A stretch of 64,000 bases of DNA from Mytilus trossulus (lineage: Eukaryota): NCBI RefSeq assembly GCF_036588685.1, contig NC_086375.1, positions 88,970,001 through 89,034,000 of the forward strand, read 5' to 3'. The position numbers and the translations under genes were made by a program. Shown piece after piece: positions 12,409 through 60,377 of the stretch (its first letter is position 1; each line of letters begins with the position of its first letter). The notes beneath the pieces were generated by a model. That model did not search any database. It was not told where the DNA came from and was given only the letters and a program-made list of their open reading frames with translations.

Positions 12409-15400
12409 ATGGACGACGTCGAAATTCAAAAGACAATGAAAAGGGACAGCAAGTTTGTCTGTTCTAACGCTAGGATTTTAATTGTATGTGTTTTCTCATC
12501 TGTTTGTTCAATTAGTTGTGTTATTGTGATGTGGTTATCTGTTAACAAAATTGAACAGATAAGGAGAGAGTTGCTAACCTTGTCGCATAGAAGTCCTGAA
12601 ACAAATTCTACCAGAGCAGCAGCGGAACATACAATCAAGGTAACTTTAACAAGCAATTTGTAGATGTTTTGTTCACAAATTACATTTCATAAATATGTAC
12701 TATTGATATTTGTATTTCAATACTTGTAGAATTCATCACATGTGCAAGTGCCATTCAACATTATATTTAAGAGTCTTAATAAAACGACCAGCCAGCAAAT
12801 CTTGTAGTATTTACTTTTTATTATCCCTTCAACTAATCTTAATATATTATCTTTCTGGAGAAAACGTCATTATATATATTCGGTGTTGACATGAATATGA
12901 AATATATGGTCATTTTTATAAATTTTCTGTTTACAAAACTTTGAATTTTCGAAAAACTAAGGATTTTCTTATTCCAGGAATATATTATTTAAACCGTATT
13001 TAGAACTCCCTTTTGGAATTTTGGGTCCTCAATGCTCTTCAACTTTGTACTTTTTGGCTTTTAAATTATTTTTATCTGAGCATTTCTAATAAGTCTTATG
13101 TGAACGAAAAGCGCGTCTGGCGTATTAAATTATAATCCTAGTACCTTTGATAACTATTGACAGTCAATCAAATAGATTTTGAATTTATATATGTTTTGAT
13201 TTTGACAGAGTGATAATATACTTCTAAAGGAAGCAAATGACGAGACAATGTCAAGCAACCAAAGTCTACATGGTGAAGGTATGTTCATTACTATACATTG
13301 CTTATAAAACATTACTGATCGTGAAATTGAGGGGTGACAACGGGTTCTTTCCGTATTGAATTCTCCTCGGAGTTTGTTTTTTTGTTGTTTTACTTTTTTC
13401 TCACGTTATAAAAAATAAAAGATGATACCAAGAGATTAAACAGTGTCACTAGTCATAGAAAGACCGGCAGCGTATATTGACCAAATAAGAAGAAAAAAAG
13501 GACACAAGTAGTAGAAAACAGTAATGATATTCAATGTGAACGATACCATGAACCGAGTAATTGATTGAAGAAAATCTCCTAGGTTAGGGGAGGGTTGGTG
13601 TCCTGCTAACATGTTTAACCCCGCCACATTCTGTATAATGTACCTGTCCCAAGTCAAGAGCGTGTAATTCATTGGTTTTCGTTTGTTGATGTGTTACATA
13701 GTTGTTTTTCGTATTTATATTTATGCGGTTTGGGCTTTGCTCATTTTTGAAGGCTGTACAACGACCTATAGTTGTAAATTTCTGTGTCATTTGGTCTCTT
13801 GTGTATAGTTTTCTCATTGGCAATCATACCACATATTCTTTTTTTCATCGTTCATTTACCGAGTAAAATATTGAAAAAAGTTAACCCTACCACTAACCGG
13901 TTGAAACAATTCACAGCTGAATGATTGGACCAAATGAAACATCCATCAACAAGGCGAAAGATTGAAGAAAATAAGACCCGCCATTATTTATTGAAACCAG
14001 TTGCCCAAAAATGGTTACCATGCATTGTTCTTGTACTTTTATTTGGCGTATTAGTTATGACAATCTATTCATTTCAATTTTGAACATCGGTATACTACTG
14101 GTGCCTTTATTTATGACAATAACTAGTACAGAGACAAACCTATGTTCATTCTCTATCGATGATAAATCAATTTCGATTTTGTAAAACCGGAAATAACAAA
14201 AGTACCGAACTCCTATATAAATTATAAAAACTGGTGGGAAAATCCATCAATCTAACATAATCAACCAACAGAATGAACGGAAAAGATTAGTAAGACACAG
14301 AATAATATTTGCCATGCCATTATCTATTTCTATTTTGAATACAAAAACTCTTGCAGTAATTTGTTATTCAATGTTTATCAGCTACAATATTTTAAATGTA
14401 CAACTATTTTATTTGAACAGAATTGGGAGGGAGACATCTAAGAACAAATAACAGAATGGAAGATATTCAAGGTAACTGCGGCACACGTCTATTTTTTTTT
14501 ATATATATATGCTATAATACAATCCTAAACGGTTTTGAGAAACAGTACTTTCAAAATTTGTGTCTATTTTCAGAATATATTTAGAACATACACTATTTGA
14601 TATTAAGTTATCCACGAATTCTTTGAAAACGTATAATAGCATAGCATTTGCGATCCATTAATCGATAAAGTCGAGAACTAAGAAACAGAATTTTACGCAA
14701 ATGATGCAAAGGATTGTTGACTATTGCTGCAAAATGTGCAAATATGGTGTGTATATTTAATTTCAGGTGGTATTTTGCATCTTGATGCACCTGTACAGCA
14801 GGTAATATTAATTATAATTTAGAATTTGAAGTCGTAAAACCGTTTTCAATGCATTGTTTTAAAAAAATACAGATGCGCAGAAAAATTGATCTTAAAAAAA
14901 ACCAAACAAATATAAAAAATCATTGCAAATAATTGTAGTAAATTCATCTTCTTCTTCATTATAATATTCAAATCAAGTGTTATTGATACATGTAACATAT
15001 ATGCTCATATGCATAGCATGTTTTAGTATACTGAAGCAAACACTTTTACTTTTTTTTTATGCCTTTAATATTTTAAAATACACAGTATACATACAATCAT
15101 AACAATTACACTGTTAAACAACTTTGTATTTTAAAAAGGCAACGTATTGAGAATGTGAAGAATCAGAATAAAATGTTTTTCATACATTTGTTGACCTTTA
15201 TAAAAAAAGTGTATAAGACTAATAAATAACATAAATACATCTTTCTTTACACCTTTCTATAGCCAAAAGCCATTCATTATGTTCCAACTGGAGTCACAAG
15301 AGATCTTATCAGTCAAACATTTACAAACAGTAAGTTGAATACTCACAATTATATCTAGAAAAAGGTTCAGTTGTGTTTACTTATAATATTGACTGATATC

Positions 15401-18400
15401 GACATTACACAGGTGTTTACAGTCAACATCACAAATTGTATCACCAATAAGATGTGGCGGTGTTCAGCTCACTGGTGATATGTGTTCGTGGTGTTAGATA
15501 CCAATATATAGTCATCTGATCTCTAACTGCACAGATTGTTTCCTATTCCTAATTGTTGCATCTCTGCTGAGGGTATCCGTGTTTCCTATTCCTAATTGTT
15601 GCATCTCTGCTGAGGGTCTCCGTGTTTCCTCATTTCAACAGTTTACCTTCGTATATTGCACGATAACTAAATCAAATGTAGCGATAAATAGCACTGTTCA
15701 ACAACTGCAATGACTCGTTTTACTCTACACTATTTTTAAAATACATAATTGAAACTTAAAATATTATATGTTTATTACACCACTTCAATCCAGTTTACTT
15801 CAACACAAAACAAATATGAGCAAGACAAAGACACTTCTTATATCATATGAAAATGAAAATACCGCTTTATACATATATACGTCTGGAGTGCGTTCCAATT
15901 ATCTATCATAAGGTCAAATAATTTTCAAAAGACATCATTTCAACATATGATATAAATATTATGTGGAAAAAGTAAAATAACAAAAATACTGAACTATGAG
16001 GAAAATTCAATACGGAAACTTTCTTAGCAAATGGAAAAATCAAAAGCTTTTAAAAATAGAACAAATTAAATGCAACAAACAAACAATAATATATATTTTG
16101 CATTTTCATCAAACATCCTTGGATTATTTTCTATGTTAGATACTTATACAGTGATATACTTTTGCTTTAAATATCTCTTATACGTTAACTTGATATTTTT
16201 CTGTATTATATTGGTATCTCCTTATATTCTAGATGCAATGTGTGTAAACAAATGGCACGGTTTTATGTGTAGGAATAATACATATAAGAATACAGGTATG
16301 ATTCATTTCGGTGTGAATGAATAAAGGCAACAGTATTTTACCTCTGTTCAAAAGTCGTAGATCGATTAAGAGATGACAAATCCGGGTTACAAACTAAAAC
16401 CGAAGGACGCTACAAGAGGAAAACAACGAAACAACAGAAAAAGAGTTATGAAAGTATACACAATAAACAAAATAAAATTGCAAATCGAGTATGGTATAAA
16501 GTTCAACACCTTGTTTTTATTGTTAAAGCAAGCAAAAACGACCTACGCTTTAAATAGAAATAGATCGAGATGATTTCCAACGAATTATTTTTGCAACAAT
16601 TTCTATTAAACCATACATATATAGTTATGTTTTCTGCAGACTTTCCCCTGACTTTGATCTCTGACAAAGATAACGTTTAATCATTTCAACATAAAACCTA
16701 CTCTTGGGCACCTCTTCATTATTCCGACTGGTCTTCTGATATCGATAGTTAATAAAAGAGGAACGACAGATACCAAAGGGACAGTCAAACTCATAAATCG
16801 AAAATAATTTGACAACGCCATGGCTAAAAATGAAAAAGACAAACAGACAAACAATAGTACACATGACACAACATAGACAACTCAATTAGCAACATGAACC
16901 CCACCAAAAACTAGGGGTGATTTCAGGTGCTCCAGGGGTAAGCAGATCCTGCTCCACACGTAACACCCGTCGTGTTGCTTATGTGATAACACATTCGGTA
17001 AATAGTCTAATTCGGTAGGTCACATTCATGAAAGGGAAGGGGATTGTAGTTATGGCGTAAGAAACATATCCGATATCAATTGTGAAAAGGTTATTTCAAA
17101 ACGGTCAACCAACTCGTGATGGCGGTCGTAAAATTTACTTCACCATTTGGAACTCTTGGTTTAATAGCTTATGAGCAGCAACCCTCTATCAAGAAAATCA
17201 TGATAGGAAATGCTAGCACGGGAATATCGTACCAATTTGGAGATATATACCCCGTATGCAGGTGCTGCTTGAATGTTGCTACTCAGAAATGGAAAATTCA
17301 CAATAAGAAAGCTGAAATCATCTCTTTTGTCGTAAAGTTTTGTTTTCAACCGACCCTTGTTGTCAATTTCTAGATGTAAGTATGAGGCTGACTTAACTGT
17401 ATCTGTAGTATCTTTTATCACTAGTTCGATGGGATTAATGCGTTCAACATAGTCACCAAATTTTGAATTATCAAGTGAAAGAACACCATCTATATAGCGG
17501 AAAGTAGAGTTAAAGGATATTGCTAACTTCTTATCTTTCTTCCTAAGGAGTTCCTGTATTAAGTCAGCCTCATAATGATAAAGAAACAGGTCGTTAAGAA
17601 GAAGGTCTCAATTTGTTCCAATTGGAATGCTGAAAAGCACGTCCTCCGAAAGTAACAAATATGTTGTTAATCAAGAAATCAAGCATTTTGATAATGTCAG
17701 TCTCAGAGAATTTTTTGTTTGAATCAGAGTGATCCTTTACAAAGTAGTATTTATCCCTCCCTAAGACAAGATACTTGTGTCTACGTTGGCCATTCTTTTT
17801 TATGAAACAAAGCAATACTAACTCTTTCAATTTGTCTTTTAGTTTGAAATATGGAATACTTGTGAAAAGTGTAGAAAAGTCAAATGATTTTATAATTATC
17901 AAAAAAACTCTTGAACTTCCACCTACCAGGAGGTCTAGGTCCATTCACTTAGCAGTACAATACTACTGTTGAATCATTACATGTGTATATTGGTATTTGC
18001 ATACCCGTTTAGTTATCTTAAAATACCTTGTACATGCTGCGAACTGAATTTGTTCCTTATTTATAGATTCCAATCGAATTATAGAATTTTGGGAAAAAGC
18101 TCAATGGACAAAGACACACAATAGAGATGTACTTTCACTCGGAATGAACAAATCAAGCCCTGGAATATTTACAGTGGAAACTGGCGGATTATATCTTTTA
18201 TATCTAAATGTAATAATTTGTAAATAATATAAATATAGGAAGATGTGGTATGAGTTCCACACATATGTATATATGTATCTAAGTTTATTTTGTTCATATT
18301 AATTAACAATATGAAAACAGTAGATGTAGGAGAGTTGGATTACATTATTAGCAGTTGAATAGTCAAAGGAATTATACACCATAGTAATGTCACATTCGTG

Positions 18401-19035
18401 AATAGTGAACGGGATTGTAGTTACGACATAACATATCCGATATTTATCTGTGAAACGGATATTCCATAACTTTCAAACAAACTAGTTATGTTCTCCGTAA
18501 AATTTACGAAGAGAAAGAGATGATTTCATCTCCATTTTGAACTCTTTGGTTAATAACTTGTTTAATTGTTGTTTGCTCAACGTTTAGTTCTAATTTATTT
18601 GTGGATATTTGAAAGACAGACATAATTCTAAATCAGTATCCTTACTTTTATATTTAAAAAAACTATTCAAAAGGCATATTCCAAAAAATATTATTTTTTT
18701 ATACAGATTTCAAACATGAAGTTATTATTACAAAACGCATTCTAAATGTATACTTTTCTTAATATATGTTGTAGGTTCTTATCAGTGCAACACTTTCTAA
18801 ACACGACGTTGGAATATTTATAGCAGATGACAAAAAATTAGTTTGCCGTGAGAATTTAGACTATGTCAGAGGTGCCGCATCTGTGTCTACTAACTCCAAA
18901 GCTAAAACCTGCAGTGTATCAGGCGTGTTTTACGTCGAGCGAAGTCAAACAATTACCGTTAAGATAGTCACCAGGAACACCGAAATATACCTGGATAGCT
19001 ATAATACAAACTTTGGAGCTGTTTTACTTGCATAA
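12409..19035 (+). CDS. TNF-superfamily ligand gene 1 (type II membrane, no collagen; ~306 aa, 8 exons)
   Basis: Exons 12409-12639, 13209-13278, 14421-14471, 14767-14801, 15263-15329, 16233-16295, 18067-18209, 18775-19035; total 921 nt in frame. TM ILIVCVFSSVCSISCVIVMWL; RHLR candidate convertase site; TNF-domain motifs PKAIHY, W, GIFTVETGGLYLLYLNV, TCSVSGVFYVERSQTITV, terminal TNFGAVLLA*. Confidence 0.88.
12880..13158 (+). mobile_element. decayed retrozyme copy (mutated hammerhead)
   Basis: Colinear with 48837-49115; hammerhead core altered (CTAATAA...GAAAAGCGCGTC). Confidence 0.75.
13584..13846 (+). mobile_element. SINE-like interspersed repeat (AACATGTTTAACCCCGCCAC...CCTGTCCCAAGTCA core)
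   Basis: Core and 3' end (TCATTGGCAATCATACCACAT...T-tail) recur at ~42875-42940, ~47620-47950 and ~49890-50130; assignment to SINEs (Nin/Deu-like core) is from memory, not a search. Confidence 0.55.
15538..15630. repeat. 43-bp tandem duplication (2.2 copies)
   Basis: GTTTCCTATTCCTAATTGTTGCATCTCTGCTGAGGGT(A/C)TCCGT starting at 15538 and 15581, partial third copy at 15624. Confidence 0.9.
16753..17886 (-). mobile_element. Penelope-like retroelement (Naiad-like), 5'-truncated RT fragment plus 3' tail, frameshifted
   Basis: FDFSTLFTSIP..KLKDKLKELV, FLINNIFVTFGGR, FRYIDG(D), SASYLHLEID..RLKTKLYDKRDDFSF..VNFPFLSSNI..APAYGVYIS; lies in intron 6 of TNF gene 1. Confidence 0.85.
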
Positions 19036-19482: not shown

Positions 19483-22400
19483 ATGAAAGTTACTCAAAAT
19501 AATGCACCCGTATGCATTCAAAATTTCGGATATTTTATCATATGTTTTTACATTTTATGGTCGTGCAAAGAAATAGCGCGACTTTCAAACGATGTTGTTG
19601 TTCTGCGTAAATCTGTACAAGACATTTTGATAGACGGCCATACACCAGTTCAGGTAAACTCTTTCTTATATGCTTATGAATTCCTCAATTATGTAATATA
19701 AAAAGCAGCACATCCAATATGTATGATATCTGCTCAGATAATTCTTCATCAAACAGGAAAAACACAAGCATTTTATATTTGAATATATCTTCGCTCAAAA
19801 ACTATTAATATTGCACAAAGATATTACATACAGTTTGTCCACATCAATTTTACGGTATTTTATGTCTAACTATTAATGTTCTCCCTTTATTTTGACAAAG
19901 CTATCATGTAATATACTTCTTAAACTTATGGTTTATGTTTTAACTTCATAAGAGTACAAGAGAGCATGGTCTTATGCATAAAAATGTACACAGAGTCCAA
20001 GACGATGATGACACAGAAAACAAAGCTTCCGACGATCAATATTTTCGCCAAAAAAGATTTGCAGATAAAGGTATGGTTTTGATACTTTATCTTTTTTAAA
20101 TGACATTGCATTTCTGAAACACTGTACAATTGTTTTTTTCTTCTTCAAATAATAGAAATAATGTAAAATTATAACTATAATTTAAACTATATGTATATCT
20201 GAATTTACTGTCTATTGTGTATTTTCTATTTTTCTTCTTGAAATATTTATAAATTGATTTATCTACATAAGGATTAGACACCGTCTTCATATTTAAGATA
20301 AGAAAAAATGCAAGAAAGAAAAACGATACCTGAGGAAATGTCGGAAGAAGCTGCGCAATAAGGCGATAGTCAGTTCAAAAGAGGTACCCACTTACTTAAA
20401 TTTTGATATAGTTACAATGATGATAGTTCATCCAAGTAAGGAAGACACGATAAAATATTCACATTATACGTCAGTTAAGTGATTAATGCGTAGAGTGGAT
20501 TAAAAATAAACCGTTAGATGATCAAACACAACAGGTGGAACTTTATTTGTGGGCGCTCCTGTGGAATGTTAATCGGATAACGCGCTACGGACGTATACAA
20601 TTTGCTCGTAACTTTTCATTTTTGATACTCTTTTTTTTTATTTTATCAAAAACGTTTTTCACAAGTTTTTTTTTCTGCCTAAAAGATATTTTATTTCACA
20701 AAATTTATTAATCACGTTAACGAATTCAATGTGTACAGTATACTTAAATGAGACTGAAAACAAACATTTTAACTTATTAAAAATAACTTAGATATTTACA
20801 TCTTTTAATAACCATGATAACAGCCACGTGTAATTGTGTCAAGGTAAAATGCATGTCGAAAACTTAACTAGCACCGCAATGGCAAATAAAATACAATATA
20901 CTAAACACAACATAAACAACTAACATGACTAAATACTGAGGAACTCAAATACCACTTAAAAATCACGGGGTGATATATCAGGTAGTCTGAAGTTTAATCA
21001 GATCATGCTCCATACGTGGCACCTGTCGTGTTGTGCAAAACGTACAAATCCATTGATAAATCTACCATTAACGCCTTATTCTCTTTAGAATAAAAGAAAA
21101 ACAATCAAGTTATGGCAAAACAATTTCTTTATTCGAAATAATAAAAAAAAACAAACATATACAACTTTTCAGTCAAATTTTAAACTGTAATAAGACGAGA
21201 CATTTCTTTTATTGCAGGCAAGGTTACAAGCAGCCCATGTGGAACTTGATTTTCATATAAACACTACAATGTCGAAAAAACTATTAATGGCTATTGACAG
21301 TAAGTATAACAATGTAAACATACACCTGGAAGGTAGACGTACATGTGATGCATCTTAAAAACGAATCTTATTATATATCAAAGTCAGACAGTAGTTTACC
21401 GTTGTTCAAATCTAAAACATTAAAAAGACAAAAGTCAAAGTAACAAACACAAATGAGGGAGTTTGTATATAGATACATGTTTATAAATGTTGATGAATAT
21501 ATGTTTATGTTTATAATATATATTGTAAAATGTTTATATTTTGATTTTGGACTCAAATATTTTCAGAATGTTATAAAGAATTTGGTGGATTAGTCTGTTA
21601 CAACAATAAGACTTATGAGAGCGACGGAAGACAATCAGGTAAATCATTTGAAAATTCAACCAATAAGACTTATGAGAGCGACGGTAGACAATCAGGTAAA
21701 ACATTTGAAATTCAACCAATAAGACTTATGAGAGCGACGGTAGACAATCAGGTAACTTATTTGAAAGTTCAAACAATAAGACTTATGAGAGTGACGGTAG
21801 ACAATCATGTAAAACATTTGAAAGTTCAACCAATAAGACTTTTGAAAGCGACAGCAGACAATCAGGTAAAATAATTGAAAGTTAAACCAATATGACTTAT
21901 GAGAGCGACGGTAGACAATCATGTAAACATTTGAAAGTTCAACCAATAAATCTTGTGAGAGCGACGGTAGACAATCAGGTAAAACATTTGAAAGTTCAAC
22001 CAATATGACTTATGAGAGCGACGGTAGACAATCAGGTAAAACATTTGAAAATTCAACCAATAAGACTTATGAGAGCGACGGTAGACAATCAGGTAAAATA
22101 TTTGAAATTTCAACCAATAAGACTTATGAGAGCGACGGTAGACAATCAGGTAAATCATTTGAAAGTTCTAGAGGATATAAATGAAACAGATATCGTAAAT
22201 ATAAACTAAAACAGAAATTTGTTTCCATGATGTATACGAGCATTTATCTCTACACATTGTACCTTTTTATCTACAGGCACTTGTCTCATATTTTCCCCCT
22301 TTTATGTTATATTTGGGGGAAAATTGAGACAAGTGTCTGTGGTTTTGACTGTCACCTGTTAAGAAGCATTAATACAGGTAGTCGTATTGCTTCAGACATA

Positions 22401-24858
22401 GGAGGAATCTACATCCATGATGGTTTAAAACTCGATTATTATTCAAAACAAAATTAATCTGTGATTTTTTGTTTTTTTTATGATAATCAGGCCATCATAA
22501 AGTATATGAACTAGCAATTATTATTTACTTATCACGATACAGATTAAACACATTAATGTTATCATTATAATTGAACGAAAACGTGTTTTATACGATAAGA
22601 AATGTAAACATAAGTTCAAACGACCTTAAAACATATATTATTATTGACAATCAAAAGATTGTTATTCTAATATTGTTTTGTTTTGGAATGGCAATAGAAT
22701 GACAAAACGTAAAATATATATAAAAAAAAAACTCATGTAGCAAAAGTTAACGGGAAAATAATTGAAATTAATAATAAAAATGTATGCGTATCCGTTTCTT
22801 GTTTGCTTATCAAAATGAAATGAAAACATTGAATACATTTCTATATTAATACAGAAAAGATTCTTGGTGTACCATGGAAACTATCGTCACCAAAAGAGAT
22901 GTCACCACTGGAACTGACATCTGAGCATGGAAAATATAAAGTAAAATATGATGGTTTATATATAGTGTATTTGAACGTAAGTGAATTAAGTATAGCTTAT
23001 ATCTTGAAGAAAATGCATAACGCTAGGCCAATAAAGAATAATACCAAATTCCATATTAGATAATAAATGTACTAAAATAACATTTTTATCGTAAACTTTG
23101 TCTCTTCTATAGTATTCCAAATTGAAAATAAAGTAAACTTGCACACTACAGTAATGTCACTAGTTTAGTCAAGTATACAACGTCAAAAAAAGTTATTAAA
23201 CAAATGTATAAGATCACAGTAGTGAACACAATGATGAATGTATCAAGTGCGATTTGATTAGGCAGGTTCCGTTTAGAATTTATCTAAGAGTGTAGTATTT
23301 GTGTTCTTTTTACTTTTTACTGATGTTCAACGCAACTAAAGTAATGGTATCTGTGAAAGGCGGATGAACACTTGATAATAAATGAGATACATACGTTCTA
23401 ATATATTCATATAACTAAAAAACTAAAGTAAAAAGTTGCCGGCTTGGTTTTTGTTGTCTATAAGAGTGGATGTAAAATTGAGAATGGAAATGGGGAATGT
23501 GTCACAGAGACAACAACCCGACCAAATAAAAAAACACAACAGCAGAAGGTCACCAACAGGTCTTCAATGTAGCGAGAAATTCCCGCACCCGGAGGCGTCC
23601 TTCAGCTGGCCCCTAAACAAATATATACTAGTTCATTGAAAATGAACGCCATACTTATTTCCAAATTGTACACAAGAAACTAAAATTAAAATAATACAAG
23701 ACTAACAAATGCCAAAGGCCTTGTACACTTTCCTTCATTTATCGGCACACACAACCATTACCATAGGAAAGTCAACTAATTGCCAAATAAATTAACATAT
23801 ATCCCATCTGACAGTTCTAGAGCCATAGTATTGCTTGGCTCGTAGTATTTGTTATATAGCAATGCACAGTCCTTTACAAAGAAGATTTGCTCTCGGGAAT
23901 CAGCAGCGTAATGTTCGAAATATGTTGAATCGGAGATGAGTGTTACCGGAGACCAAATGTCCAAACACAAAGTCAAACTACTTCATCGAAAATAAAACCT
24001 CCATTAAAAGAGAATATTCTGAGCATATATTTGCAAAGATAATATGTCACATCAATCGAGATGTAGACTATGTTGAATTAATCTCACCAAGATTGCAATC
24101 CAATGACAAACATACTATGATTTGCTATATTGTCCTACCGTTATAGAATAACCGTTTCACCGATGATATCGGATATGTTCCTGATGTCGTTACTACAATA
24201 CCCTCCCCTTTTCACGAATGTGACCTACTTTATTAGACTACTTACCGGATTTGTAATAACATAAGCAACACGACGGTTGCCACATGTGAAGCATGATCTG
24301 CGTACCCTTCCGGAGCATCTGAGATCACCCCCCCCCCCCCAGTTTTTGGTGGGGTTCGTGTTGCTCAGTCTTTAGTTTTCTATGTTGTGTCTTCTGTACT
24401 ATTGTTCGTCTTTTTTTTTTTAGCCATGGAGTTTTCAGTTCATTTTCTATCTACGAGTTTGACTTTCCCTCTGGTGTCTTTCGTCCCTCTTTCAGGTTGC
24501 TTTGCTGAACCTGATATTTGAAATAGGTATTATTAGAGTCAGTGCCTGTCATCTACAATTTTAGTATTGTCATATTGTATTTCAGATACTATTCATCCCA
24601 ACTAATCTAGAGGAAAGAGCTGCCGTGTTCTTAGATGACAAACAGATAATGACTTGTCAAGACGGTGTCTACATGGGACATGAACTAGATCTACCTGATA
24701 GCCAACAAAACTTCACAGAAAAATCATGTGCCACGTTAGGCATGTTCATTATAAACAAGGGTCAAACATTATCAATACGTATTGAAACACAAAGTACCAA
24801 AATAAGAATGTGGGGAGTCGGCAATAACTTTGGAGTCATTTTATTAAATAAAAAATGA
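19483..24858 (+). CDS. TNF-superfamily ligand gene 2 (no collagen; ~307 aa, 7 exons)
   Basis: Exons 19483-19653, 19953-20070, 20298-20383, 21218-21299, 21567-21638, 22855-22976, 24586-24858; total 924 nt in frame. Hydrophobic FGYFIICFYILWSC; furin site RQKR; basic stalk; LQAAHV, W, GKYKVKYDGLYIVYLNI, SCATLGMFIINKGQTLSI, NNFGVILLNKK*. Start codon less certain. Confidence 0.86.
21604..22168 (+). repeat. 57-bp minisatellite, 10 copies, spanning the exon 5/intron 5 junction of TNF gene 2
   Basis: Unit CAATAAGACTTATGAGAGCGACGGTAGACAATCAG|GTAAAACATTTGAAAGTTCAAC; base before GT at 21638, 21695, 21751, 21808, 21865, 21922, 21978, 22035, 22092, 22149. Confidence 0.96.
23474..23720 (-). mobile_element. 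SINE-like repeat, 3' part
   Basis: Reverse-complement match to ~47720-47950 (...TTGTCTCTTTGACACATTCCCCATTTCCATTCTCAA); short copies also at ~4740-4795 and ~33330-33390. Confidence 0.7.
24138..24492 (+). mobile_element. Penelope-like element 3' tail (non-coding fragment)
   Basis: Matches the tails of the RT-bearing copies at ~27560-27884 and ~16753-17110 (reverse complement). Confidence 0.8.
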
Positions 24859-25348: not shown

Positions 25349-26944
25349 TAAAATTATCTAGCATAGTCCAAAATGAAGCAAAACTAATGGCATCATAGGA
25401 CATTCAACTCGTACAAAAGAGATTTCTCTTTGAATTTCCTACAACTTTCTTTTAACTGAAATTATATATCATGTGGAGATTTTATGTCTACCCGGAATCT
25501 TTTTTGGTAAAAATCATAAAAATGAATTAAGTATCAGTTCATGCATACTCATCATATATTTGTATATATAAGATTTGATGTCCTGCTACACAAATGCACA
25601 TTGCACATATCATTAATCTTTGCATCATCTAAATCTACGCTAAATTCACAAATCGTCTGTCATCATCAAAACCTGCTCAATTTTTAAATATGTGTCTAAA
25701 TCTAGTCAATATTCATATACCATATATCATCGTCAAAACCCGTATAATTTGTCAATCTCTTAATCCACGCAATATTCCCAAATCTTCTGTAATCGTCAAA
25801 ATATGCTTTATTTCAATATATTTGTCCTCTTAATCTACTCAATGTGCACATACCATATGTCTGTCATCGCCTAAATCTGCTCATTTTTCAGATACTTCTA
25901 AGATTAGTAATTTTGTGATTTTACTTTTTACATCCATTATATCTGCTCAAGACTATTCTAACGTATCATCTTTTGTCCTCTTAATCAAAGATACACACTT
26001 AATCTCTTAGTAGTAGTTTGGCTGTGGAGAATCTGTCACAAAAACTAAACATTGTCTATCAATAGAAGATTTTGAACTTCAGAAGATTTAAAAAAAAAAA
26101 CTACAGTTGATGTGTCGTCATCAGTAAACCCTTTGTCCTATAACAGTAGGTCGCGCGACAGAAGATCTGCAATCCTAACTTAAAATTATGTCTGTAAAAG
26201 AGATTCGAACTATAAAACGTGTGCAATATAGATATTTCGTTTTGTTATAGTTTGTATGAAGAACGATAAATAAACGTATATTTGAAATATAAAGAACAGA
26301 CACTAATTTCATAGGCTCATCTAATCACAAGCTTAGAGAAATAATTTGTTTCTTTACTTAAAAATACCCAATCGGAATCGCGTGAATTCCAAACAGACAA
26401 TTGCGTGCTTCTTTAGGACAATTAGCTCTCAATATACATGAATCAATCGAAATGAAAAGCAAGTGTAGCAAAAATATCACAAGAGGAAATACGAAGACTT
26501 TTCTGATGTGTGATATATCTACGACCGCGTGAGTTGAGACACAGACACACCTTATCGGTCCACTTATGGTATGGTAACTTAAGAAAATATGGTTTTCCAT
26601 TAAAAGAACACTAATAAAGTTCAAGTAATTTAAACCATTATACACTAGTAAAACAGATATATTACCGCCACGTGAAGGCAGGGAGTATAATTGCTGAGAA
26701 AAATTGGACATTGCAACTAAAAAAAGTCAAGTTTGTTATATCCTAGATTGTTATAGTTGTCCATCTGTGTCAATTTCTTGTCATAAATGAAATGTAATAC
26801 AATATATATTAAAAGAGGATACACGTTAATTAGTCATCTGATACTCCCAAACTGCGTTGTTCACAGTTAGTCTGAAAAAGTCATCTTGGATACTCCACCC
26901 CCTGTGCTTTTTACATTAAGTCTGGGTTAACTCTGGGTAGTTTA

Positions 26945-45757: not shown

Positions 45758-45759
45758 TT

Positions 45760-55000: not shown

Positions 55001-55012
55001 TGTAACCAATGG

Positions 55013-58000
55013 ATGAAAATGGATGCTAATAAAACTTTTCGCAAAAGTGTGAACGAACTATCGGAATATGCATATGATAGCAATAACGAGACGGAACGGC
55101 ATTGTTCCAAATGTGCAAACCAGCAAAAAATTAACATTATAATATTCTGTATTTTGTTTGTAGTAATAAGTGTAAACGCTGTCTTAGCTGTGAATCAAAT
55201 TACAGATGCACAAAGACTACAAACGTTACAGAATACAATTGACATACTGAAGAGCCAGGTCAAAGATGTCAGACTGAGGCAAGATGAGGGTGATGTCGAG
55301 GATGGAGATGATCAGGTCGGATATATATTTAATTTAATAACTTAAGAATTTATAATGTTTCTAATATTTGAGGCTTATTAACAGATTTTCAGTAACCAAG
55401 TAAATAGTGATGGCACGCATAACTTTTAATTTTTGTTTTCTAAGCAAGAAAAGAACCTTTTCTCGCTTCTTTTGGAAATCCTGCGTATCAAAAAGTTCTT
55501 TATTACAAGATTTGAACATCGGTATACTACTATCGGATTTATTTTTATCTGCATTATTTCATATGAAAAAATATGCCAACGAATTGTCAAAGTCACGAAA
55601 CAATTTTCTTAAATGGTACAAGGGAAATACATAATTATTTCAAAACAATAACATCTTTCAAACACATATAACACAAGCTATTAAGTAAACAAAAGAAACA
55701 TTGTATTCAGTTATTACAATATTCACCCATTAAATGCAGTCTAATTGTAAATTTTGGTAAATATGGACATGTTTTATGTGATGAATTGATTTTGTGTTCA
55801 GGTATATGTTTGGTATTTTGAACATTGAATTCGTGATCGAGAAATCATACCCGTCACCTCAATTATCTACAAAGCATATTTCTGGTTATATTTTGTTTTG
55901 TTTTCCGGGACCCCTGCTTAAAACTCAAACACGACTTTTGAAAGAGTATAAAGATAGATTTCAGATTAATATGAAGGCAACAACACAGATAAACTAACAA
56001 AACTTTTTGAAAAACTAGAAATCAAAGATTGAGAAGACACACAACTTTGATAAAACAATAAAAAGACAACTATTCAGAAATAAAGCAATTTTGAAAAACA
56101 CAATATTGATACATATGTTAAATAAATGATATAGATATTTTTTTTTTTTTAAGATGCTAAACAGTTGCGTAGAATGCAAATAAATCAGTCAAATTGTTAT
56201 TTTTGTCTAACATCAAATTGATTCACTTTCTTTGCAAACCACATTAAAATTTTATTTTCTGCTTGTATCACATATTATATGCCGTTTCAATATAAGGCAT
56301 TGATAATGTCCATTGTCTATTAATACCGTAAAAATCAGTAGTGTATTAAATAGCAAATCATGAGCACATGTCATTTGGTAAAAACAAAATTCAAAAAAAC
56401 CAGATTTCTTTATTCATTCTCATTAATCAGGCCATAGAAGGAGCCACAAGGAAAGTAGAGGAGAAGCTGGCATTTGGTTTCGCGATGTTATATAGATTAT
56501 GACAGTTCAAAGATTCAGTTCCATATTGATTGCATTTCTCCTTGAAATATACTGTATATTTAGGAGATAACTGTATTGTATTTTAAGCTTGGCCTTCGTA
56601 AAACGTAGATTTTACTGTCGCAAATTGAGGCGGAGCGGAGATAGGTAAACGGATATTTGCGACAGTAAAATCAAGTTTTACGAAGGCCAAGCTTAAAATA
56701 CAATACAGTTATCTCCATTCTAATGCCACATATTAAAATAAATGTCATTTAATACATATTTTGGCTTAAAAATGGCAACAATGAAAAATTCCGCGAAACT
56801 GTTGCATTGTCTTTAGGATCTAAACAATGTGACGTCATGTGTTTACTCTGGATGTCAAACATGAATACTAAACATATTTTTACTTTTCGTATGCTTCAGA
56901 ATGTTTTCAATATAGACTAAAAGAATATTTTGAGGCTCAAAATGTGAATATCTTGTTATTTTTTGAGAAATTACATATCCCAGAATTCAAAATGGTGGCT
57001 TTCTTAGTTACGGACTGGTAGAACGTGGAATCTAACCCCTCAAAAAATTTATCAACGTCCAATGAAAATTATCGTTACAAACTAATTGCTTTAGAATTTG
57101 ATATAACTTAAAAACTTATTTTAAGGGAATACCAATCCTGTAGTCACGTATTGACCATGAATACCTGCGATTACTCCCAGTAAGCGTGTTTCGTATTGTT
57201 AGTCTTAAGTTCTCTATGAAGTGTTTAATGAACATCGTTGTCCTGTGCACCTGATATTACTTACAGTGTTAGCTGGTTCATATTGCACAATCGTTATCTA
57301 TTGACCGTTTTGTGAACATCTGTGTCATGAACACCTGATATTAACCCCAGTGTTAGCTAGTTTTGTGTTGCCTAGACTAAATTATCTACGCAGCTTTTGT
57401 GAACCTCTTTGTACTTTTCACGTGAGATAACTCCCAGTTTTAGCGGAGTTCGTGTTGCCAAGTTTTGAATTATCGATTATTTTATCTCTTTGTCCTGAGC
57501 ACATGCGATTACTCACAGAGTAAGCGGGTTCATGTAGCTTATCTATTAAGCGTTTTATGAACCTCTTTGTCCTTTTGGTGTTTTCAATTTTGTTCATTGC
57601 GTTATCAGTTTCACTTTGATTTAAAAGAGGGACGAAAGATACCAGAGGGACAGTTAAACCCCATAAATCGAAAATAAAACTGAAAACGCCATGCTAAAAA
57701 CGAAAAAGACAAACAGACAAACAATAGTTCACATGACACAACATATAAAACTAAAGAATAAGGAACACGAACCCCACCAAAAAATGGGGGTGATCTCAAG
57801 TGATCCGGAATGGTGAGCATACCCTGCTCAACATGTGGCACCCGTCTTGTTGCTCATGTTCTAAAAAATCCGGTAAATAGTCTTATTTGGTAGGTCACAT
57901 TCATGAAAGGGAAGTTATAGGTTTTAAATGTCTTTTTTTGTTATCTTCCATATTTTTTAGTCGCATCTAGAAATTAAAAAAATATATATTTCATTTGAGA

Positions 58001-60377
58001 ACACTACTTTACTACAAAAATATGATTTCAATTTGCCAACTATATTTCTTAATTTATAGCTGCAAAACTATTACTTGCATCAGTTGTCAAATGGTATAGT
58101 TGATCATTGAAATTGGCCAATGTTTAGGTTTCTCATAAACGTCTCCTTTCTTTTCGTATAAAATACATTGCTCATTATCATTGACCCATGTTGAAACTGC
58201 ATACATTATGTGATGCAGCAGAAAAATAAGTCTCAATTTTGCAAAGTCTATGACCACATTTAATGAAAGAAAAATAAGGATGGTTTCCAAAAACTTGCAA
58301 AGGGATTAATTCAAAAGTAAAATCACAAAAATACTGAATTCAAAACGGAAAGTCCCTAATCAAATGGCAAATAAAAAAAACTCTGTATTAATTTTGAAGA
58401 TCAAGGTTTTACCTTTTAATATAACACACCAAAAAATAATAATTATGTGTACTTGTAAATGTTATGAAATTATCTGTTTGATTTTTATATAAAAACAATA
58501 CCCCTGCTGGTGGACTATTAGTCCCCGAGGATATCACCAGGCCATCAGTCCGAATTTTCGGTTTTTGAAGAAAAAATCAGATATTGTGTTATTTAAATTT
58601 GCCGTTACAAAATTCTTTTTTTTTAATTAAGCTATATCTCCCTCAAGCAAGGCTGCAATTCCTAGATTGTTTTTTTTTCTATACGTTATGATCATTCAGA
58701 TGCTTATGCTTTTCGAATATTTAAAAAAATTTCTTTACAAAAATCATATTTTTTACATAGTTTGCCCTCAAGCATCACATTGTCGAAATGCGTATCTTGT
58801 GTAGGCAAACTGGTACCGTTTATTTTTGTTTGATTCTGTTTGTTTTCTATTCAAAAACTTTAAAAGTTATTCCTTTTTTTTTTTTTAAATAATTCGATTA
58901 TTAACAGTAGTATTAAAATCATTATTATCTATAATATTATAAGTATTTGAAATAATTCATTGATTAGTAAATGTTGATAAATAATTATCTTGACATAATG
59001 TTCCTTTTTATTTATACAACAATCTTCAGTCAAAGCATAACAGTTTGCAATCGACCGCAACAGATGGTTCAAAATTGAGAAAAGGTTATTTCTAAAAGTT
59101 TGCTTGAATGACATAAATATTTAGCTTTTGGAATTTTTTATAATTTGACATTTGGCAAAATTATGACATTAAAATATTCAACACTAAACCTCTAATTCAA
59201 CAGAATTTATATCAAATAAAAACATATATAATTACTAAGGTCATATTTCCCTCCATAATTCTTTTGACTTCTGATAATTTTTTTATGATACATGTCAACA
59301 GACAGGGTCAATTTGTGCTTAATCATTTCTTTTTAATTTAAAAAAATTAGTTTTAAATAATTTGACGTCAGTTAAATGAAATTGTTGTTTGTGTACATAA
59401 AAGATACTAGCTTTGGAATTGGTTTCATATCATTCCAAACAAATGCAAATATGTATTAATTAGATTTTAGCTAAGGCCCAAATTATAAATGGTAATACTA
59501 CTTCAGCACGACAACTTGGACATATTTATGTCATTTTAATAATAGAAAAAAAAACTTTCTGCAAAAAGTTATTAAAGGTACCAGGTTTATAATTTAGTAC
59601 GTCGGCCGCGCGTTTCGTCGATATGAGAATCATCAGTGACGCAAACTTATGGGTAAATAACAGTGCACTTCAATGTCAGATCAGAACACGATTAAATTAT
59701 AAGATTGTAATAAAGATTGCAATACATTACTCTGTTATATTTTTTTTTTTAATATAAAATTTGTTGTTAATGTAGTCCAACACATATTTATTTCAAGATT
59801 AATTTTTCAAATTTTAAAACAAATTTTGTATTCGTTAGTCCGATACAATGCAATATATTTTGTCATGTCATATACCTAGTAGTTTTCTTTCTTAAACAAA
59901 ACCTGTTTTTGGTAACATTGCGATACCATGTATTTTAAATAGACATAAATTCAAATACTTTATGAACTATACACAGGTTGCCTCAAAAAATATTTTCATG
60001 TCAATTAAGAAAAAAGTCCTAATAGATAGTTGATTAAATATATAGCTCACATAACGTAGTTTCTGATATATTCTATGGAAGAAACTTATTGTTTTAATAT
60101 TAATAAAGAAGAAGAAATGAGTACAACTGTTTGAAGTTCAATTTCAAAAACACATCACAGATGATTCTACAAGGCTTTTTTATTTTAATTTTGACTTGAC
60201 AAAGTCTTTTTTCCTATTTTTTAGGTTGACATTTTAGACACATTTCCTTTTCAAATAAATCCGTTTGCCGGAGAACAAAGTAGAGAAAAAAGAAACACAA
60301 ACTCCAAACCTTGTAATGGTGATCCAAACTGCAAGAAAAGAACACGGAGACAGCAGGGTCGACGGAAGAAAAAGAAG
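55013..60377 (+). CDS. probable fourth TNF/EDA-like ligand gene, first two exons (remainder presumably beyond window)
   Basis: Exon 1 55013-55315 (CSKC, TM INIIIFCILFVVISVNAVLAV, coiled-coil-like segment, acidic end DEGDVEDGDDQ), exon 2 60225-60377 phase 0/0 (furin REKR, then CNGDPNCKKRTRRQQGRRKKKK). Layout parallels genes 2 and 3, but no TNF domain is visible in the window. Confidence 0.7.
56563..57097. mobile_element. non-autonomous hairpin element (near-perfect 154-bp palindrome plus short inverted repeats)
   Basis: 56563-56716: GGAGATAACTGTATTGTATTTTAAGCTTGGCCTTCGTAAAAC..GATTTTACTGTCGCAAAT and its reverse complement; then ATTCTAATGC (56717) and GCTTTAGAAT (57088-57097). Confidence 0.7.
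57150..57610 (+). repeat. degenerate ~80-bp tandem array resembling part of the Penelope-like tail
   Basis: About 5 copies of CACCTGA(T)ATTA(A)C(T)CCCAGT..TAGC.G.TTCGTGTTGC...TTTTGTGAAC.TCTTTGTC, similar to GAGCACCTGAGATCACCCC..GGGTTCGTGTTGCT. Confidence 0.55.
57623..57913 (-). mobile_element. Penelope-like element 3' tail
   Basis: Matches ~16753-17040; another start of the same tail at 63975-64000. Confidence 0.8.
58498..58820 (+). mobile_element. decayed retrozyme of a second, related subfamily
   Basis: Shares CTGCTGGTGGA..GTCCCCGAGG.TATCACCAG with the 355-bp unit but diverges internally; hammerhead remnant AGCATCAC[deleted]ATTGTCGAAATGCGTATC. Confidence 0.5.

What the first reader, a model, noticed from the sequence alone, without database searches (positions are those of the whole stretch)
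12409..60377. Tandem array of highly diverged TNF/EDA-like ligand genes with modular stalks
Seen: three complete same-strand genes and a probable fourth, with conserved exon phases in the TNF domain (A-H exon 0->1, Cys mini-exon 1->1, G-x-Y-x-x-Y exon 1->0, terminal F-G-x-x-L-L exon) but low sequence identity. The stalk differs per paralog: 18 Gly-X-Y in gene 3, none in genes 1 and 2. Gene 1 has a 35-nt phase 1->0 exon at the same position as the 35-nt collagen exon of gene 3 but without Gly-X-Y. Known: the EDA collagen domain multimerises TNF trimers, and bivalve TNF families are expanded. Inference: an old local expansion in which collagen was lost or gained, giving ligands of different valency. 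I cannot tell whether this cluster is already described.
Basis: partly seen in the sequence, partly recalled or inferred. Interest (0 to 1): 0.8.

Follow-up and report, generated by a model that had tools for sequence, protein, structure and literature searches.

The report
Mussel EDA-like TNF ligand gene cluster
Four neighbouring genes of the bay mussel Mytilus trossulus encode very divergent membrane-anchored TNF-family signalling proteins, one with an ectodysplasin-like collagen stalk; the genes are real and old, but public annotation already lists at least two of them.

Summary
The window is Mytilus trossulus chromosome sequence. It holds three complete same-strand TNF-ligand genes: g1 12409-19035, g2 19483-24858, g3 28817-38691. 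It also holds the first two exons of a fourth, g4 (55013-55315 and 60225-60377). I place g4's TNF-domain exons 9-13 kb beyond the window end; the link between them is not proven.

g3 has 18 uninterrupted Gly-X-Y, and both g1 and g3 have a 35-nt phase 1>0 exon. g1 and g3 match, residue for residue, the RefSeq proteins XP_063426035.1 and "ectodysplasin-A-like isoform X2".

- Pfam TNF is over threshold for g1 and g3.
- The AlphaFold model of g3 is a jelly roll closest to Eiger, EDA and APRIL.
- Spliced contigs in four runs confirm five g3 junctions.

Trees show the paralogs are old: a Mytilus-only clade is rejected. Collagen changed state at least five times. g2's relatives in other bivalves carry collagen, so loss in g1 and g2 is the likelier direction. 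Different valency is plausible but untested.

This is a new member of a known kind. Bivalve TNF expansions and collagen-bearing invertebrate TNFs are published, and this scan judged a similar four-gene TNF cluster 760 kb upstream as ordinary.

The parts
12409..12639 (+). g1 exon 1: cytoplasmic tail, transmembrane segment, start of stalk (phase 0>0)
   Evidence: 100% identical to residues 1-77 of XP_063426035.1 (P0051) by tblastn. Model checked.
13209..13278 (+). g1 exon 2, stalk (0>1)
14421..14471 (+). g1 exon 3, 51 nt (1>1). It sits where g3 has its 156-nt collagen exon, but has no Gly-X-Y.
14767..14801 (+). g1 exon 4, 35 nt (1>0), no Gly-X-Y. Same position, phase and length as g3's 35-nt collagen exon.
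   Evidence: The two 35-nt exons share only 11/35 bases, which is chance level (P=0.29).
15263..15329 (+). g1 exon 5, A-strand exon with A-I-H-Y (0>1)
16233..16295 (+). g1 exon 6, Cys mini-exon with C-x8-C followed by an N-x-T sequon (1>1)
18067..18209 (+). g1 exon 7, ends G-L-Y-L-L-Y-L-N (1>0)
   Evidence: Weak Pfam TNF hit on this exon alone (12.7 bits).
18775..19035 (+). g1 terminal exon, strands D-H, ends F-G-A-V-L-L-A then stop
   Evidence: Pfam TNF scores 28.3 bits on the whole protein P0051.
19483..19653 (+). g2 exon 1: short tail plus transmembrane segment (0>0)
   Evidence: 95-96% identical to Mytilus edulis and M. galloprovincialis proteins P0002 and P0058. Model.
19953..20070 (+). 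g2 exon 2: acidic stalk ending in the furin-type motif R-Q-K-R (0>1)
20298..20383 (+). g2 exon 3: very basic stretch with two Cys, no collagen (1>0)
   Evidence: 100% identical to P0002 residues 94-122.
21218..21299 (+). g2 exon 4, A-strand exon with A-A-H-V (0>1)
21567..21638 (+). g2 exon 5, Cys mini-exon (1>1). Its 3' end and donor site are repeated in the 57-nt minisatellite at 21604-22168.
22855..22976 (+). g2 exon 6, ends G-L-Y-I-V-Y-L-N (1>0)
24586..24858 (+). g2 terminal exon, ends F-G-V-I-L-L-N-K-K then stop
28817..29086 (+). g3 exon 1: tail with C-P-K-C, transmembrane helix, coiled stalk (0>0)
   Evidence: 100% identical to P0071, 'ectodysplasin-A-like isoform X2' of M. trossulus. AlphaFold predicts a helix over residues 35-88.
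31844..31919 (+). g3 exon 2: acidic then basic stretch ending K-S-K-R (0>1)
   Evidence: The junction 31919>32365 is present in spliced contigs of 4 runs.
32365..32520 (+). g3 exon 3: R-R-C-K-C-K followed by 15 Gly-X-Y triplets (1>1)
   Evidence: Pfam Collagen: 39.4 bits on this exon alone and 40.8 bits on P0071. Junctions confirmed.
32882..32916 (+). g3 exon 4: 35-nt collagen exon holding the last three Gly-X-Y (1>0)
   Evidence: Junctions 32520>32882 and 32916>33601 are present in 4 runs.
33601..33700 (+). g3 exon 5, A-strand exon with A-A-H-Y (0>1). It has two donor sites: 33685 (RefSeq isoform X2) and 33700 (adds G-Y-R-E-Y).
   Evidence: The long form, 33700>35172, is seen in all 4 runs.
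35172..35231 (+). g3 exon 6, Cys mini-exon (1>1)
   Evidence: Junction 35231>36114 is present in 4 runs.
36114..36238 (+). g3 exon 7, ends G-I-Y-L-V-Y-F-H (1>0)
38404..38691 (+). g3 terminal exon, ends [12 protein letters not shown] then stop
   Evidence: Pfam TNF gives 13.1 bits on the exon alone and 24.1 bits on P0071.
55013..55315 (+). g4 exon 1: tail with C-S-K-C, transmembrane segment, stalk (0>0)
   Evidence: It is the only clear type II membrane-anchor ORF between 39 and 73 kb: hydropathy 3.08, against 2.0-2.2 for three weak ORFs at 50-53 kb. Model. No RNA or annotation evidence was obtained.
60225..60377 (+). g4 exon 2: R-E-K-R motif, then a basic stretch with two Cys (0>0). The remaining three exons lie beyond the window.
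   Evidence: Weak similarity to the basic stalks of gastropod THD proteins P0016 and P0045. Phases checked. Downstream exons: L001:9093-9141 or 9380-9428, L004:1866-2032 and L004:2756-3016.

Best explanation
The region is a same-strand tandem cluster of four type II transmembrane ligands of the TNF superfamily in Mytilus trossulus. They belong to the EDA/APRIL/BAFF/Eiger-like branch, in which the TNF homology domain is split over several exons.

g3 is the mussel copy of a gene found across molluscs that RefSeq calls ectodysplasin-A-like in several species. Reading from the N-terminus it has:
- a membrane anchor;
- furin-type basic motifs;
- a Cys-containing basic patch;
- 18 Gly-X-Y;
- the TNF domain.

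g1 and g2 belong to a second, bivalve-wide group whose other members often carry collagen. g1 kept the exon skeleton of the collagen region but not the Gly-X-Y. g2 lacks the 1>1 collagen exon and kept only the basic Cys-rich exon. g4 is a more conventional, Eiger-like paralog with a short basic stalk and no Cys mini-exon.

The following mechanism is inferred, not shown. Each protein trimerises through its jelly-roll domain and is shed by a furin-type protease. The shed ligand then signals through TNFR-family receptors. Only g3 would bundle trimers through a collagen triple helix, as vertebrate EDA does. The basic patches of g2, g3 and g4 could tether the ligand to sulfated glycans. On this reading the paralogs differ in valency and range of action.
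For: Species and gene models
- The chromosome length is 94,312,406 bp. That equals the contig length recorded for the two RefSeq proteins below.
- P0051 (XP_063426035.1) and P0071 (ectodysplasin-A-like isoform X2) are 100% identical to g1 and g3 exons.

Family membership
- Pfam TNF scores 28.3 bits for g1 and 24.1 bits for g3 (cut-off 23). Pfam Collagen scores 40.8 bits for g3.
- A profile of the three terminal exons hits only TNF ligands in the PDB: an APRIL/BAFF fusion at 1.6e-9 and EDA at 1.9e-4.
- A profile of 30 family members gives APRIL/BAFF 1.9e-39, EDA 1.4e-17, APRIL 4e-17, Eiger 2e-11.
- The AlphaFold model of P0071 has pLDDT above 90 over most of the domain.
- Its best Foldseek matches are Eiger (6i50), EDA-A1, APRIL, EDA-A2 and BAFF, with TM-scores of 0.76-0.80.

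Expression of g3
- Contigs in four runs carry GT..AG joints at all five predicted g3 junctions tested.
- One 1505-nt contig spans collagen exon > 35-nt exon > A exon > Cys exon > G-x-Y exon.

Age and collagen history
- THD-only tree.
- AU tests reject a Mytilus-only clade (p 3.7e-60) and a single collagen-bearing clade (p 3.8e-4).
- g2 resembles P0042, which has 14 Gly-X-Y, in both the TNF domain and the transmembrane region.

g4
- Its two downstream exons hit consecutive parts of Pfam TNF, at 20.0 and 17.4 bits.
- It shares the phase-0 intron after G-L-Y-x-x-Y-x-x with g1-g3.
Against: - g2's orthologue scores only 19.3 bits on Pfam TNF, below the 23-bit cut-off. Its membership rests on homology to g1 (E 6e-19) and on the family profile.
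- I obtained no RNA evidence for g1, g2 or g4.
- The link between g4's first two exons and the TNF-domain exons 8.7 kb further on is inferred only from phases and from the lack of another strong membrane-anchor exon.
- The two 35-nt exons show no sequence similarity above chance, so their homology rests on position, phase and length.
- No vertebrate or cnidarian sequences were in the tree. Orthology to EDA proper, and the ancestral state of the collagen stalk, are therefore not demonstrated.
- Trimerisation, shedding, collagen bundling and receptor binding are untested.
- The runs laid are only guessed to be RNA. They may come from sister Mytilus species: likeness was 90-99%, and there is a 9-nt indel.
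Confidence: 0.85

Rival explanations
1. Collagen was gained rather than lost. The ancestor of the cluster had a plain stalk, and Gly-X-Y repeats expanded independently in g3 and in some relatives of g2.
For: - Tree counts cannot give a direction.
- Gly-X-Y tracts can expand by slippage. The tract varies among Mytilus species and RNA contigs (18, 19 and 20 triplets; 9-nt indel).
- The 35-nt exons of g1 and g3 show no residual sequence similarity.
Against: - Collagen-bearing members occur in both main molluscan groups and in a protobranch, pteriomorphs and a gastropod.
- Gain would have to create the same layout each time: basic Cys patch, then collagen directly before the A strand.
- g1 keeps a 1>1 exon plus a 35-nt 1>0 exon exactly where g3 has its collagen exons.
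- Collagen-bearing TNF ligands are reported in Hydra, Acropora and Nematostella (bioRxiv 10.1101/2019.12.13.875351) and in vertebrate EDA.
Confidence: 0.12
2. The fourth gene is not one gene. The membrane-anchor ORF at 55013 and the basic exon at 60225 are unrelated to the TNF-domain exons 9-13 kb beyond the window. Alternatively, one of the two parts is a dead fragment.
For: - No RNA, annotation or homologous full-length protein was found for g4.
- The inferred intron is 8.7 kb long.
- Exon 1's donor, GTCGGA, is weak.
Against: - Phases fit without any extra exon: 0>0, 0>0, 0>1, 1>0, 0.
- No other strong type II anchor ORF lies between 39 and 73 kb. Three weak ones (hydropathy 2.0-2.2) lie at 50-53 kb, upstream of the 55013 exon.
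- The basic exon resembles the stalks of gastropod THD proteins.
- All exons are open and on the same strand as g1-g3.
Confidence: 0.2
3. The genes are C1q-domain proteins. That family is hugely expanded in bivalves and has the same jelly-roll fold, often behind a collagen stalk.
For: C1q-like structures appear among the Foldseek matches from rank 32 onward. Tandem C1qDC expansions are common in bivalves (PMC6835236, listed).
Against: - There is no Pfam C1q hit in any search.
- The 60 best sequence-profile hits shown in the PDB are all TNF ligands.
- The proteins have an N-terminal membrane anchor instead of a signal peptide.
- The G-L-Y-x-x-Y and F-G-A-x-L-L motifs are TNF signatures.
Confidence: 0.01
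4. The cluster is a recent, Mytilus-specific burst of duplication followed by fast divergence.
For: Paralog identity is low, and g2 sits on a very long branch (2.94 changes per column).
Against: - Holding the Mytilus paralogs together costs 69.5 log-likelihood units (p-AU 3.7e-60).
- g1 groups with oyster, pearl-oyster and scallop genes. g3 groups with Solemya, Potamilus and gastropod genes.
- A fused Pinctada gene model (P0007) joins a g1-type 3' end to a collagen-bearing group-A gene. That suggests the same neighbourhood in pearl oysters.
Confidence: 0.02

Closest known systems
Vertebrate ectodysplasin A (EDA-A1/EDA-A2)
   Same: g3 has the same order of parts: type II membrane anchor, furin-type basic motif, basic patch, an uninterrupted run of 18 Gly-X-Y, then a C-terminal TNF domain. 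EDA has 19 Gly-X-Y with one break (my own knowledge).

Further resemblances:
- The TNF domain is split over several exons.
- The Cys pair in the terminal exon aligns with the pair shared by EDA, APRIL and BAFF.
- EDA structures are among the best sequence and fold matches.
- An alternative donor site inside the TNF domain gives two isoforms. This recalls the two-residue EDA-A1/A2 switch (the EDA fact is my own knowledge).
   Different: - Identity is only about 15% in the structural alignment.
- g3 has an extra disulfide mini-exon between strand A and the next strands.
- g3's alternative donor adds 5 residues after strand A, not at the EDA-A1/A2 site.
- Orthology to EDA and use of an EDAR-like receptor were not tested.
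- g1, g2 and g4 have no collagen.
Drosophila / Spodoptera Eiger
   Same: It is the only well-studied protostome TNF ligand. It is type II, and its structure 6i50 is the top fold match. The family profile gives E 2e-11. RefSeq names a Haliotis member of the g3 group 'protein eiger-like'.
   Different: Eiger has no collagen stalk and is a single gene, not a cluster. Its receptors Wengen and Grindelwald are not known to be the partners here.
APRIL, BAFF and TWEAK (TNFSF13, 13B, 12)
   Same: - They are the best sequence-profile hits.
- They share the Cys pair in the second half of the domain.
- Furin shedding followed by a basic glycan-binding patch, as in APRIL (my own knowledge), resembles the g2 and g4 stalks.
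   Different: They are vertebrate immune cytokines without a Cys mini-exon. No orthology is implied.
Cnidarian collagen-bearing TNF ligands (HyTNF of Hydra; some Acropora and Nematostella TNFs)
   Same: They have a membrane anchor, a collagen domain and a TNF domain in an invertebrate, and were interpreted as EDA-like (bioRxiv 10.1101/2019.12.13.875351).
   Different: They are in a different phylum. No tandem series of paralogs with decayed stalks is described. They were not compared by sequence here.
Expanded TNF superfamily of bivalves (23 genes in Crassostrea gigas)
   Same: The expansion is in the same class of animals and was already reported (Gao et al. 2015, as cited in PMC12843592; Zhang et al. 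2015, as cited). This genome has at least 18 further TNF-domain loci, 14 of them on the same chromosome.
   Different: Those 18 loci have the whole TNF domain in one exon. The four genes here have it split over 3-4 exons, so they belong to a separate, EDA-like lineage. I could not read the oyster paper to see whether collagen-bearing members are described there.

Membership tests
TNF ligand superfamily (Pfam PF00229) | C-terminal TNF homology domain recognised by the family profile above its curated cut-off | tested here: met
   - g1 protein P0051: 28.3 bits. g3 protein P0071: 24.1 bits. The cut-off is 23.
- g2's orthologue P0058 scores only 19.3 bits, below the cut-off, but is homologous to g1 at E 6e-19.
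- g4, exon by exon: 20.0 bits on profile positions 16-36 and 17.4 bits on positions 63-127.
TNF ligand superfamily (Pfam PF00229) | Type II membrane topology: N-terminal cytoplasmic tail and a single transmembrane segment, with no signal peptide | tested here: met
   - The first exons of all four genes hold one hydrophobic stretch after a short tail.
- AlphaFold gives a long helix over residues 35-88 of g3.
- Topology itself was not measured.
TNF ligand superfamily (Pfam PF00229) | Ten-strand jelly-roll fold | tested here: met
   - Tested for g3 only.
- pLDDT is above 90 over most of residues 180-364.
- Foldseek matches TNF ligands with TM-scores of 0.76-0.84.
TNF ligand superfamily (Pfam PF00229) | Homotrimer that binds TNFR-family receptors | not testable with these tools
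   Only monomer models can be made here, and there are no binding data.
Ectodysplasin-type ligands | Collagen Gly-X-Y domain between membrane anchor and TNF domain | tested here: met
   - g3 has 18 uninterrupted triplets and Pfam Collagen at 40.8 bits.
- The collagen exons are spliced to the TNF-domain exons in contigs of 4 runs.
- Not met by g1, g2 or g4, which have no run of four or more triplets.
Ectodysplasin-type ligands | Furin-type cleavage motif and a basic patch upstream of the collagen | tested here: inconclusive
   The motifs K-S-K-R and R-G-R-R and a Lys/Arg-rich stretch lie directly before the Gly-X-Y run of g3. This is seen in sequence only. Cleavage and glycan binding were not tested.
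Ectodysplasin-type ligands | Orthology to vertebrate EDA and signalling through an EDAR-type receptor | not tested
   - No vertebrate ligand sequences were available for the tree.
- The PDB rankings put EDA, APRIL and Eiger together at the top.
- The RefSeq name 'ectodysplasin-A-like' is automatic.
C1q domain family (PF00386) | Globular C1q domain recognised by the family profile, with a signal peptide | tested here: not met
   There is no C1q hit. C1q-like structures appear only from rank 32. The proteins have membrane anchors instead of signal peptides.

The most novel reading that the evidence does not exclude
The cluster may preserve an ancestral bilaterian EDA-type gene (g3) beside three derived copies that shed the collagen stalk in different ways. 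It may also use alternative splicing of the A-strand exon to change receptor choice, as EDA-A1/A2 do. Two features point that way:
- g3 has two donor sites, giving isoforms with or without five residues.
- g4 has two tandem 49-nt exons that cannot both be included in frame.

If true, this would be a natural series for testing how stalk valency and a spliced loop tune TNF signalling outside vertebrates.
Probability: 0.25. Interest if true: 0.6.

Novelty: new member of a known kind. Interest (0 to 1): 0.4.

Why it matters
How TNF ligands came to have different stalks, and whether the EDA layout of anchor, collagen and TNF domain is ancestral, is still open. This cluster puts four stalk types next to each other with a shared exon skeleton:
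- full collagen (g3);
- a relic of the collagen exons (g1);
- a basic patch only (g2);
- a short basic stalk (g4).

That makes it a convenient system for testing whether collagen bundling and glycan tethering change the potency or range of a ligand in an invertebrate.

For annotation, the practical gain is modest. At least two of the genes are already in RefSeq. The general facts, TNF expansion in bivalves and collagen-bearing TNFs in invertebrates, are published.

Tried and rejected
- Pfam on single exons was too weak to decide: terminal exons scored 13-17 bits. I therefore used public proteins identical to the exon translations.
Scripts translated exon by exon and read only the single split codon at each junction.
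- Searching the window for g4's TNF-domain exons found none. They were found after fetching flanking DNA.
- No further TNF-domain exons lie in the 20 kb upstream, or in the 20 kb downstream that follows the stretch holding g4's exons.
- A word search with g4's terminal exon found nothing. Because of the length limit of that tool, this says little.
The fused Pinctada model is only an indirect hint.
- The two 35-nt exons are not similar at the nucleotide level.
- The C1q reading is rejected.
- A Mytilus-only burst is rejected.
- Eight literature searches found no paper on collagen-bearing molluscan TNF ligands or on this cluster. The key oyster paper (Gao et al. 2015) is not in the library.
It found only a copia-type retrotransposon. 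I did not pursue the kelch gene.

Full report
**What the window is.**
The window is G000:C3:88970001-89034000 of a 1.30-Gb assembly. The contig is 94,312,406 bp long. P0051 (XP_063426035.1, 'uncharacterized protein LOC134709830', 306 aa) matches gene 1. P0071 ('ectodysplasin-A-like isoform X2', 364 aa) matches gene 3. The sequence is AT-rich (about 31% G+C) and has no N.

**Checking the observation.**
ORF listing and three-frame reading showed the membrane-anchor first exons, the G-[LI]-Y-x-x-Y exons and the terminal F-G-x-x-L-L exons of three same-strand genes. I fixed the remaining exon boundaries in two ways. One was tblastn of public Mytilus proteins against the window. The other was reading each boundary directly.

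Scripts translated each exon in its own frame and read only the one split codon at each junction. The public proteins identical to the exon translations served as stand-ins for the spliced products.

The resulting models have canonical AG/GT at every junction and open frames:

| gene | span | exons | product |
|---|---|---|---|
| g1 | 12409-19035 | 8 | 306 aa |
| g2 | 19483-24858 | 7 | 307 aa |
| g3 | 28817-38691 | 8 | 364 or 369 aa |

The TNF-domain part has the same phases in all three genes: A-strand exon 0>1, Cys mini-exon 1>1, G-x-Y-x-x-Y exon 1>0, then a phase-0 terminal exon. g3 encodes 18 uninterrupted Gly-X-Y across a 156-nt exon and a 35-nt exon. g1 has a 51-nt 1>1 exon and a 35-nt 1>0 exon at the same places without any Gly-X-Y. 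g2 has no 1>1 stalk exon at all.

**The fourth gene.**
The window contains a clear type II anchor exon (55013-55315) and a basic exon (60225-60377, phase 0>0). The basic exon holds an R-E-K-R motif and two Cys. Nothing resembling a TNF domain follows inside the window.

After fetching flanking DNA I found the rest downstream, on the same strand:
- a terminal exon ending F-F-G-L-I-K-L-K at L004:2756-3016;
- a G-L-Y-F-L-Y-S-Q exon at L004:1866-2032;
- two tandem 49-nt A-strand exons at L001:9093-9141 and 9380-9428.

The two larger exons hit consecutive parts of Pfam TNF, at 20.0 and 17.4 bits. The intron after G-L-Y-x-x-Y-x-x is phase 0, as in g1-g3. There is no Cys mini-exon. No other strong membrane-anchor ORF lies between 39 and 73 kb, and the phases close without further exons. 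One five-exon gene of about 306-310 aa is therefore the simplest reading. I have no RNA or annotation to prove the 8.7-kb intron.

**What the genes are.**
A profile of the three terminal exons, searched against PDB sequences, returned TNF ligands as its 13 best hits. These included an APRIL/BAFF fusion at 1.6e-9, EDA at 1.9e-4 and APRIL at 3e-3; the four weaker hits (E 0.9 and above) were unrelated proteins. The same profile, run against 1.84 billion representative proteins, found 50 relatives, essentially all molluscan where named.

Pfam results were:
- TNF is over threshold for the g1 and g3 proteins (28.3 and 24.1 bits, cut-off 23).
- Collagen scores 40.8 bits for g3.
- TNF is 19.3 bits, under threshold, for the M. 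galloprovincialis orthologue of g2. That protein is nevertheless homologous to g1 at E 6e-19.

A 30-member family profile hits APRIL/BAFF at 1.9e-39, EDA at 1.4e-17, APRIL at 4e-17, Eiger at 2e-11, then BAFF, TWEAK and other TNF ligands. The 60 best hits shown are all TNF ligands; none is C1q.

The AlphaFold model of P0071 has a confident beta-sandwich from residue 180 to the end. Its best Foldseek matches are Eiger, EDA-A1, APRIL, EDA-A2 and BAFF. The C1q alternative is therefore rejected.

The two Cys in the terminal exon align with the pair found in APRIL. The second of them also aligns with the EDA Cys.

**Expression.**
Sixteen runs held part of the g3 region, with shares that fit its exon fraction. 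I laid four of them on 31800-37799. All four showed GT..AG joints at 31919>32365, 32520>32882, 32916>33601, 33700>35172 and 35231>36114.

One 1505-nt contig runs through the collagen exon, the 35-nt exon, the A exon, the Cys exon and the G-x-Y exon. These five predicted junctions are thus confirmed, and the collagen stalk is joined to the TNF domain in mature RNA.

Three caveats apply:
- The tool only guesses that the runs are RNA.
- The contigs are 90-99% alike, so they may come from sister species.
- The joints to exon 1 and to the terminal exon lay outside the stretch I could lay.

Two public transcript-derived proteins from other species (P0005, P0069; contigs of 1.25-1.5 kb) have the same complete layout.

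**History of the cluster.**
A tree on the TNF domain alone (181 columns) gives two groups.
- Group A holds g1 with oyster, pearl-oyster, scallop and one unnamed sequence. It also holds scallop 'ectodysplasin-A-like' proteins with 13-14 Gly-X-Y, a pearl-oyster gene with 7, and g2 on a long branch.
- Group B holds g3 with its Mytilus orthologues (18-20 Gly-X-Y), Solemya (7), Potamilus (0) and a starred gastropod clade. In that clade Gigantopelta has 11 triplets and the others have few or none.

Holding all Mytilus paralogs together is rejected (p-AU 3.7e-60). So is holding all collagen-bearing ligands together (p 3.8e-4). Collagen needs at least five changes on the tree.

g2 also shares its transmembrane motif with the collagen-bearing P0042. 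Its basic two-Cys exon looks like the patch that precedes collagen in scallop, Gigantopelta and g3. Collagen-bearing TNF ligands are also reported from Hydra, Acropora and Nematostella. Taken together, these points make loss in the g1 and g2 lineages more likely than gain in g3.

The direction is still not proven. The tree is unrooted, and the two 35-nt exons have no sequence similarity above chance (11/35, P=0.29).

A fused pearl-oyster gene model (P0007) joins a g1-type 3' end to a collagen-bearing group-A gene. This hints that the g1-g2 neighbourhood is old.

**How it probably works.**
Shown:
- type II anchor;
- TNF jelly roll;
- collagen tract spliced between them in g3;
- furin-type and basic motifs in the stalks of g2, g3 and g4.

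Inferred from what is known of EDA, APRIL and Eiger (my own knowledge, plus Swee et al. 2009 as cited):
- The domain trimerises.
- A furin-type protease releases the ectodomain.
- In g3 the collagen triple helix bundles trimers into higher-order ligands.
- The basic patches hold the ligand on sulfated glycans.

g1, with neither collagen nor a basic patch, would be a plain trimer. None of this was measured.

**Context and novelty.**
The genome has at least 18 further TNF-domain loci with the whole domain in one exon, 14 of them on this chromosome. The four genes here form a separate lineage with a split domain.

Bivalve TNF expansion is published: 23 genes in the Pacific oyster. Several RefSeq annotations already name molluscan members 'ectodysplasin-A-like' or 'eiger-like'.

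I found no paper on this cluster or on collagen-bearing molluscan TNF ligands in eight searches, but the main oyster paper is not in the library. I therefore rate this as a new member of a known kind. It has some attractive details: the retained exon skeleton, the spliced A-strand region, and Gly-X-Y number variation.

Noticed in passing
window 21604-22168: A 57-nt minisatellite (9.9 copies, 90% matches) repeats the 3' end of g2's Cys mini-exon together with its GT donor. At least eight exact donor-like copies follow the first. The unit is 19 codons, and use of the second donor stays in frame. A public M. galloprovincialis model (P0059, 320 aa) appears to contain extra repeat-derived residues. 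This is the subject of another note of this scan.
   Followed up: partly
window 16233-16295, 21567-21638, 35172-35231: The 60-72-nt Cys mini-exon (C-x8-C followed by an N-x-T sequon) is present in g1, g2 and g3 and in many bivalve relatives and Gigantopelta. It is absent from g4 and from several gastropod and Solemya proteins. In the AlphaFold model of g3 it forms confident short strands (pLDDT 93-95 over residues 211-230).
   Followed up: partly
window 33685 / 33700: g3's A-strand exon has two donor sites 15 nt apart. RefSeq isoform X2 uses the first. The M. edulis isoform X1 uses the second, which adds G-Y-R-E-Y just after strand A, and the four laid runs show only joints at this second site. 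The position inside the TNF domain recalls the EDA-A1/A2 splice switch.
   Followed up: partly
window 32455-32461: Contigs of three of the four runs carry a 9-nt in-frame insertion in the collagen exon (19 instead of 18 Gly-X-Y). The fourth matches the window. Orthologues have 19 (M. edulis) and 20 (M. coruscus) triplets, so the collagen length varies within the genus.
   Followed up: partly
L001:9093-9141 and L001:9380-9428 (9.1 and 9.4 kb beyond the window end): These are two tandemly duplicated 49-nt exons (both phase 0>1, similar splice sites, 287 nt apart). They encode alternative A-strand segments of g4, with Y-I-H-I-E-G versus F-V-H-I-E-G. Including both would break the frame, so they look like mutually exclusive exons. 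There is no RNA evidence.
   Followed up: partly
window 3-3626 (- strand): A 1208-codon open frame runs off the window start, with Pfam RVT_2 (104.5 bits) and integrase core (37.1 bits). It is a copia-type retrotransposon.
   Followed up: partly
window 17164-17944 (-) and 26941-27345 (+): Two related open frames share motifs such as I-K-D-T-T-x-T-V-K-S-A-S-Y-L. One lies in g1's intron 6 and the other between g2 and g3. They have no Pfam hit and are probably fragments of one repeat family.
   Followed up: no
window 33000-33199, 34200-34599, 35400-35999, 37200-37799: Contig depth is very high, with many partial matches, in the g3 introns. These are repeated elements that are abundant in the runs, not part of the gene.
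   Followed up: no
G000 contig C3, e.g. 82543303-82607541 and 88175564-88182756: The genome has at least 18 TNF-domain loci with the whole domain in a single open frame, 14 of them on this chromosome. They include a group of five at 82.54-82.61 Mb and a pair about 0.79 Mb upstream of the window.
   Followed up: no
P0007 (Pinctada imbricata KAK3095714.1): This public gene model looks like a fusion of two neighbouring genes. It starts with the 3' end of a g1-type TNF domain. That is followed by a basic patch, 7 Gly-X-Y and a second complete TNF domain with a Cys mini-loop.
   Followed up: partly
window 28856-28867 and 55100-55111: The cytoplasmic tails of g3 (C-P-K-C) and g4 (C-S-K-C) carry a C-x-x-C motif shortly before the membrane segment. 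Several relatives have Cys pairs there too. The function is unknown.
   Followed up: no
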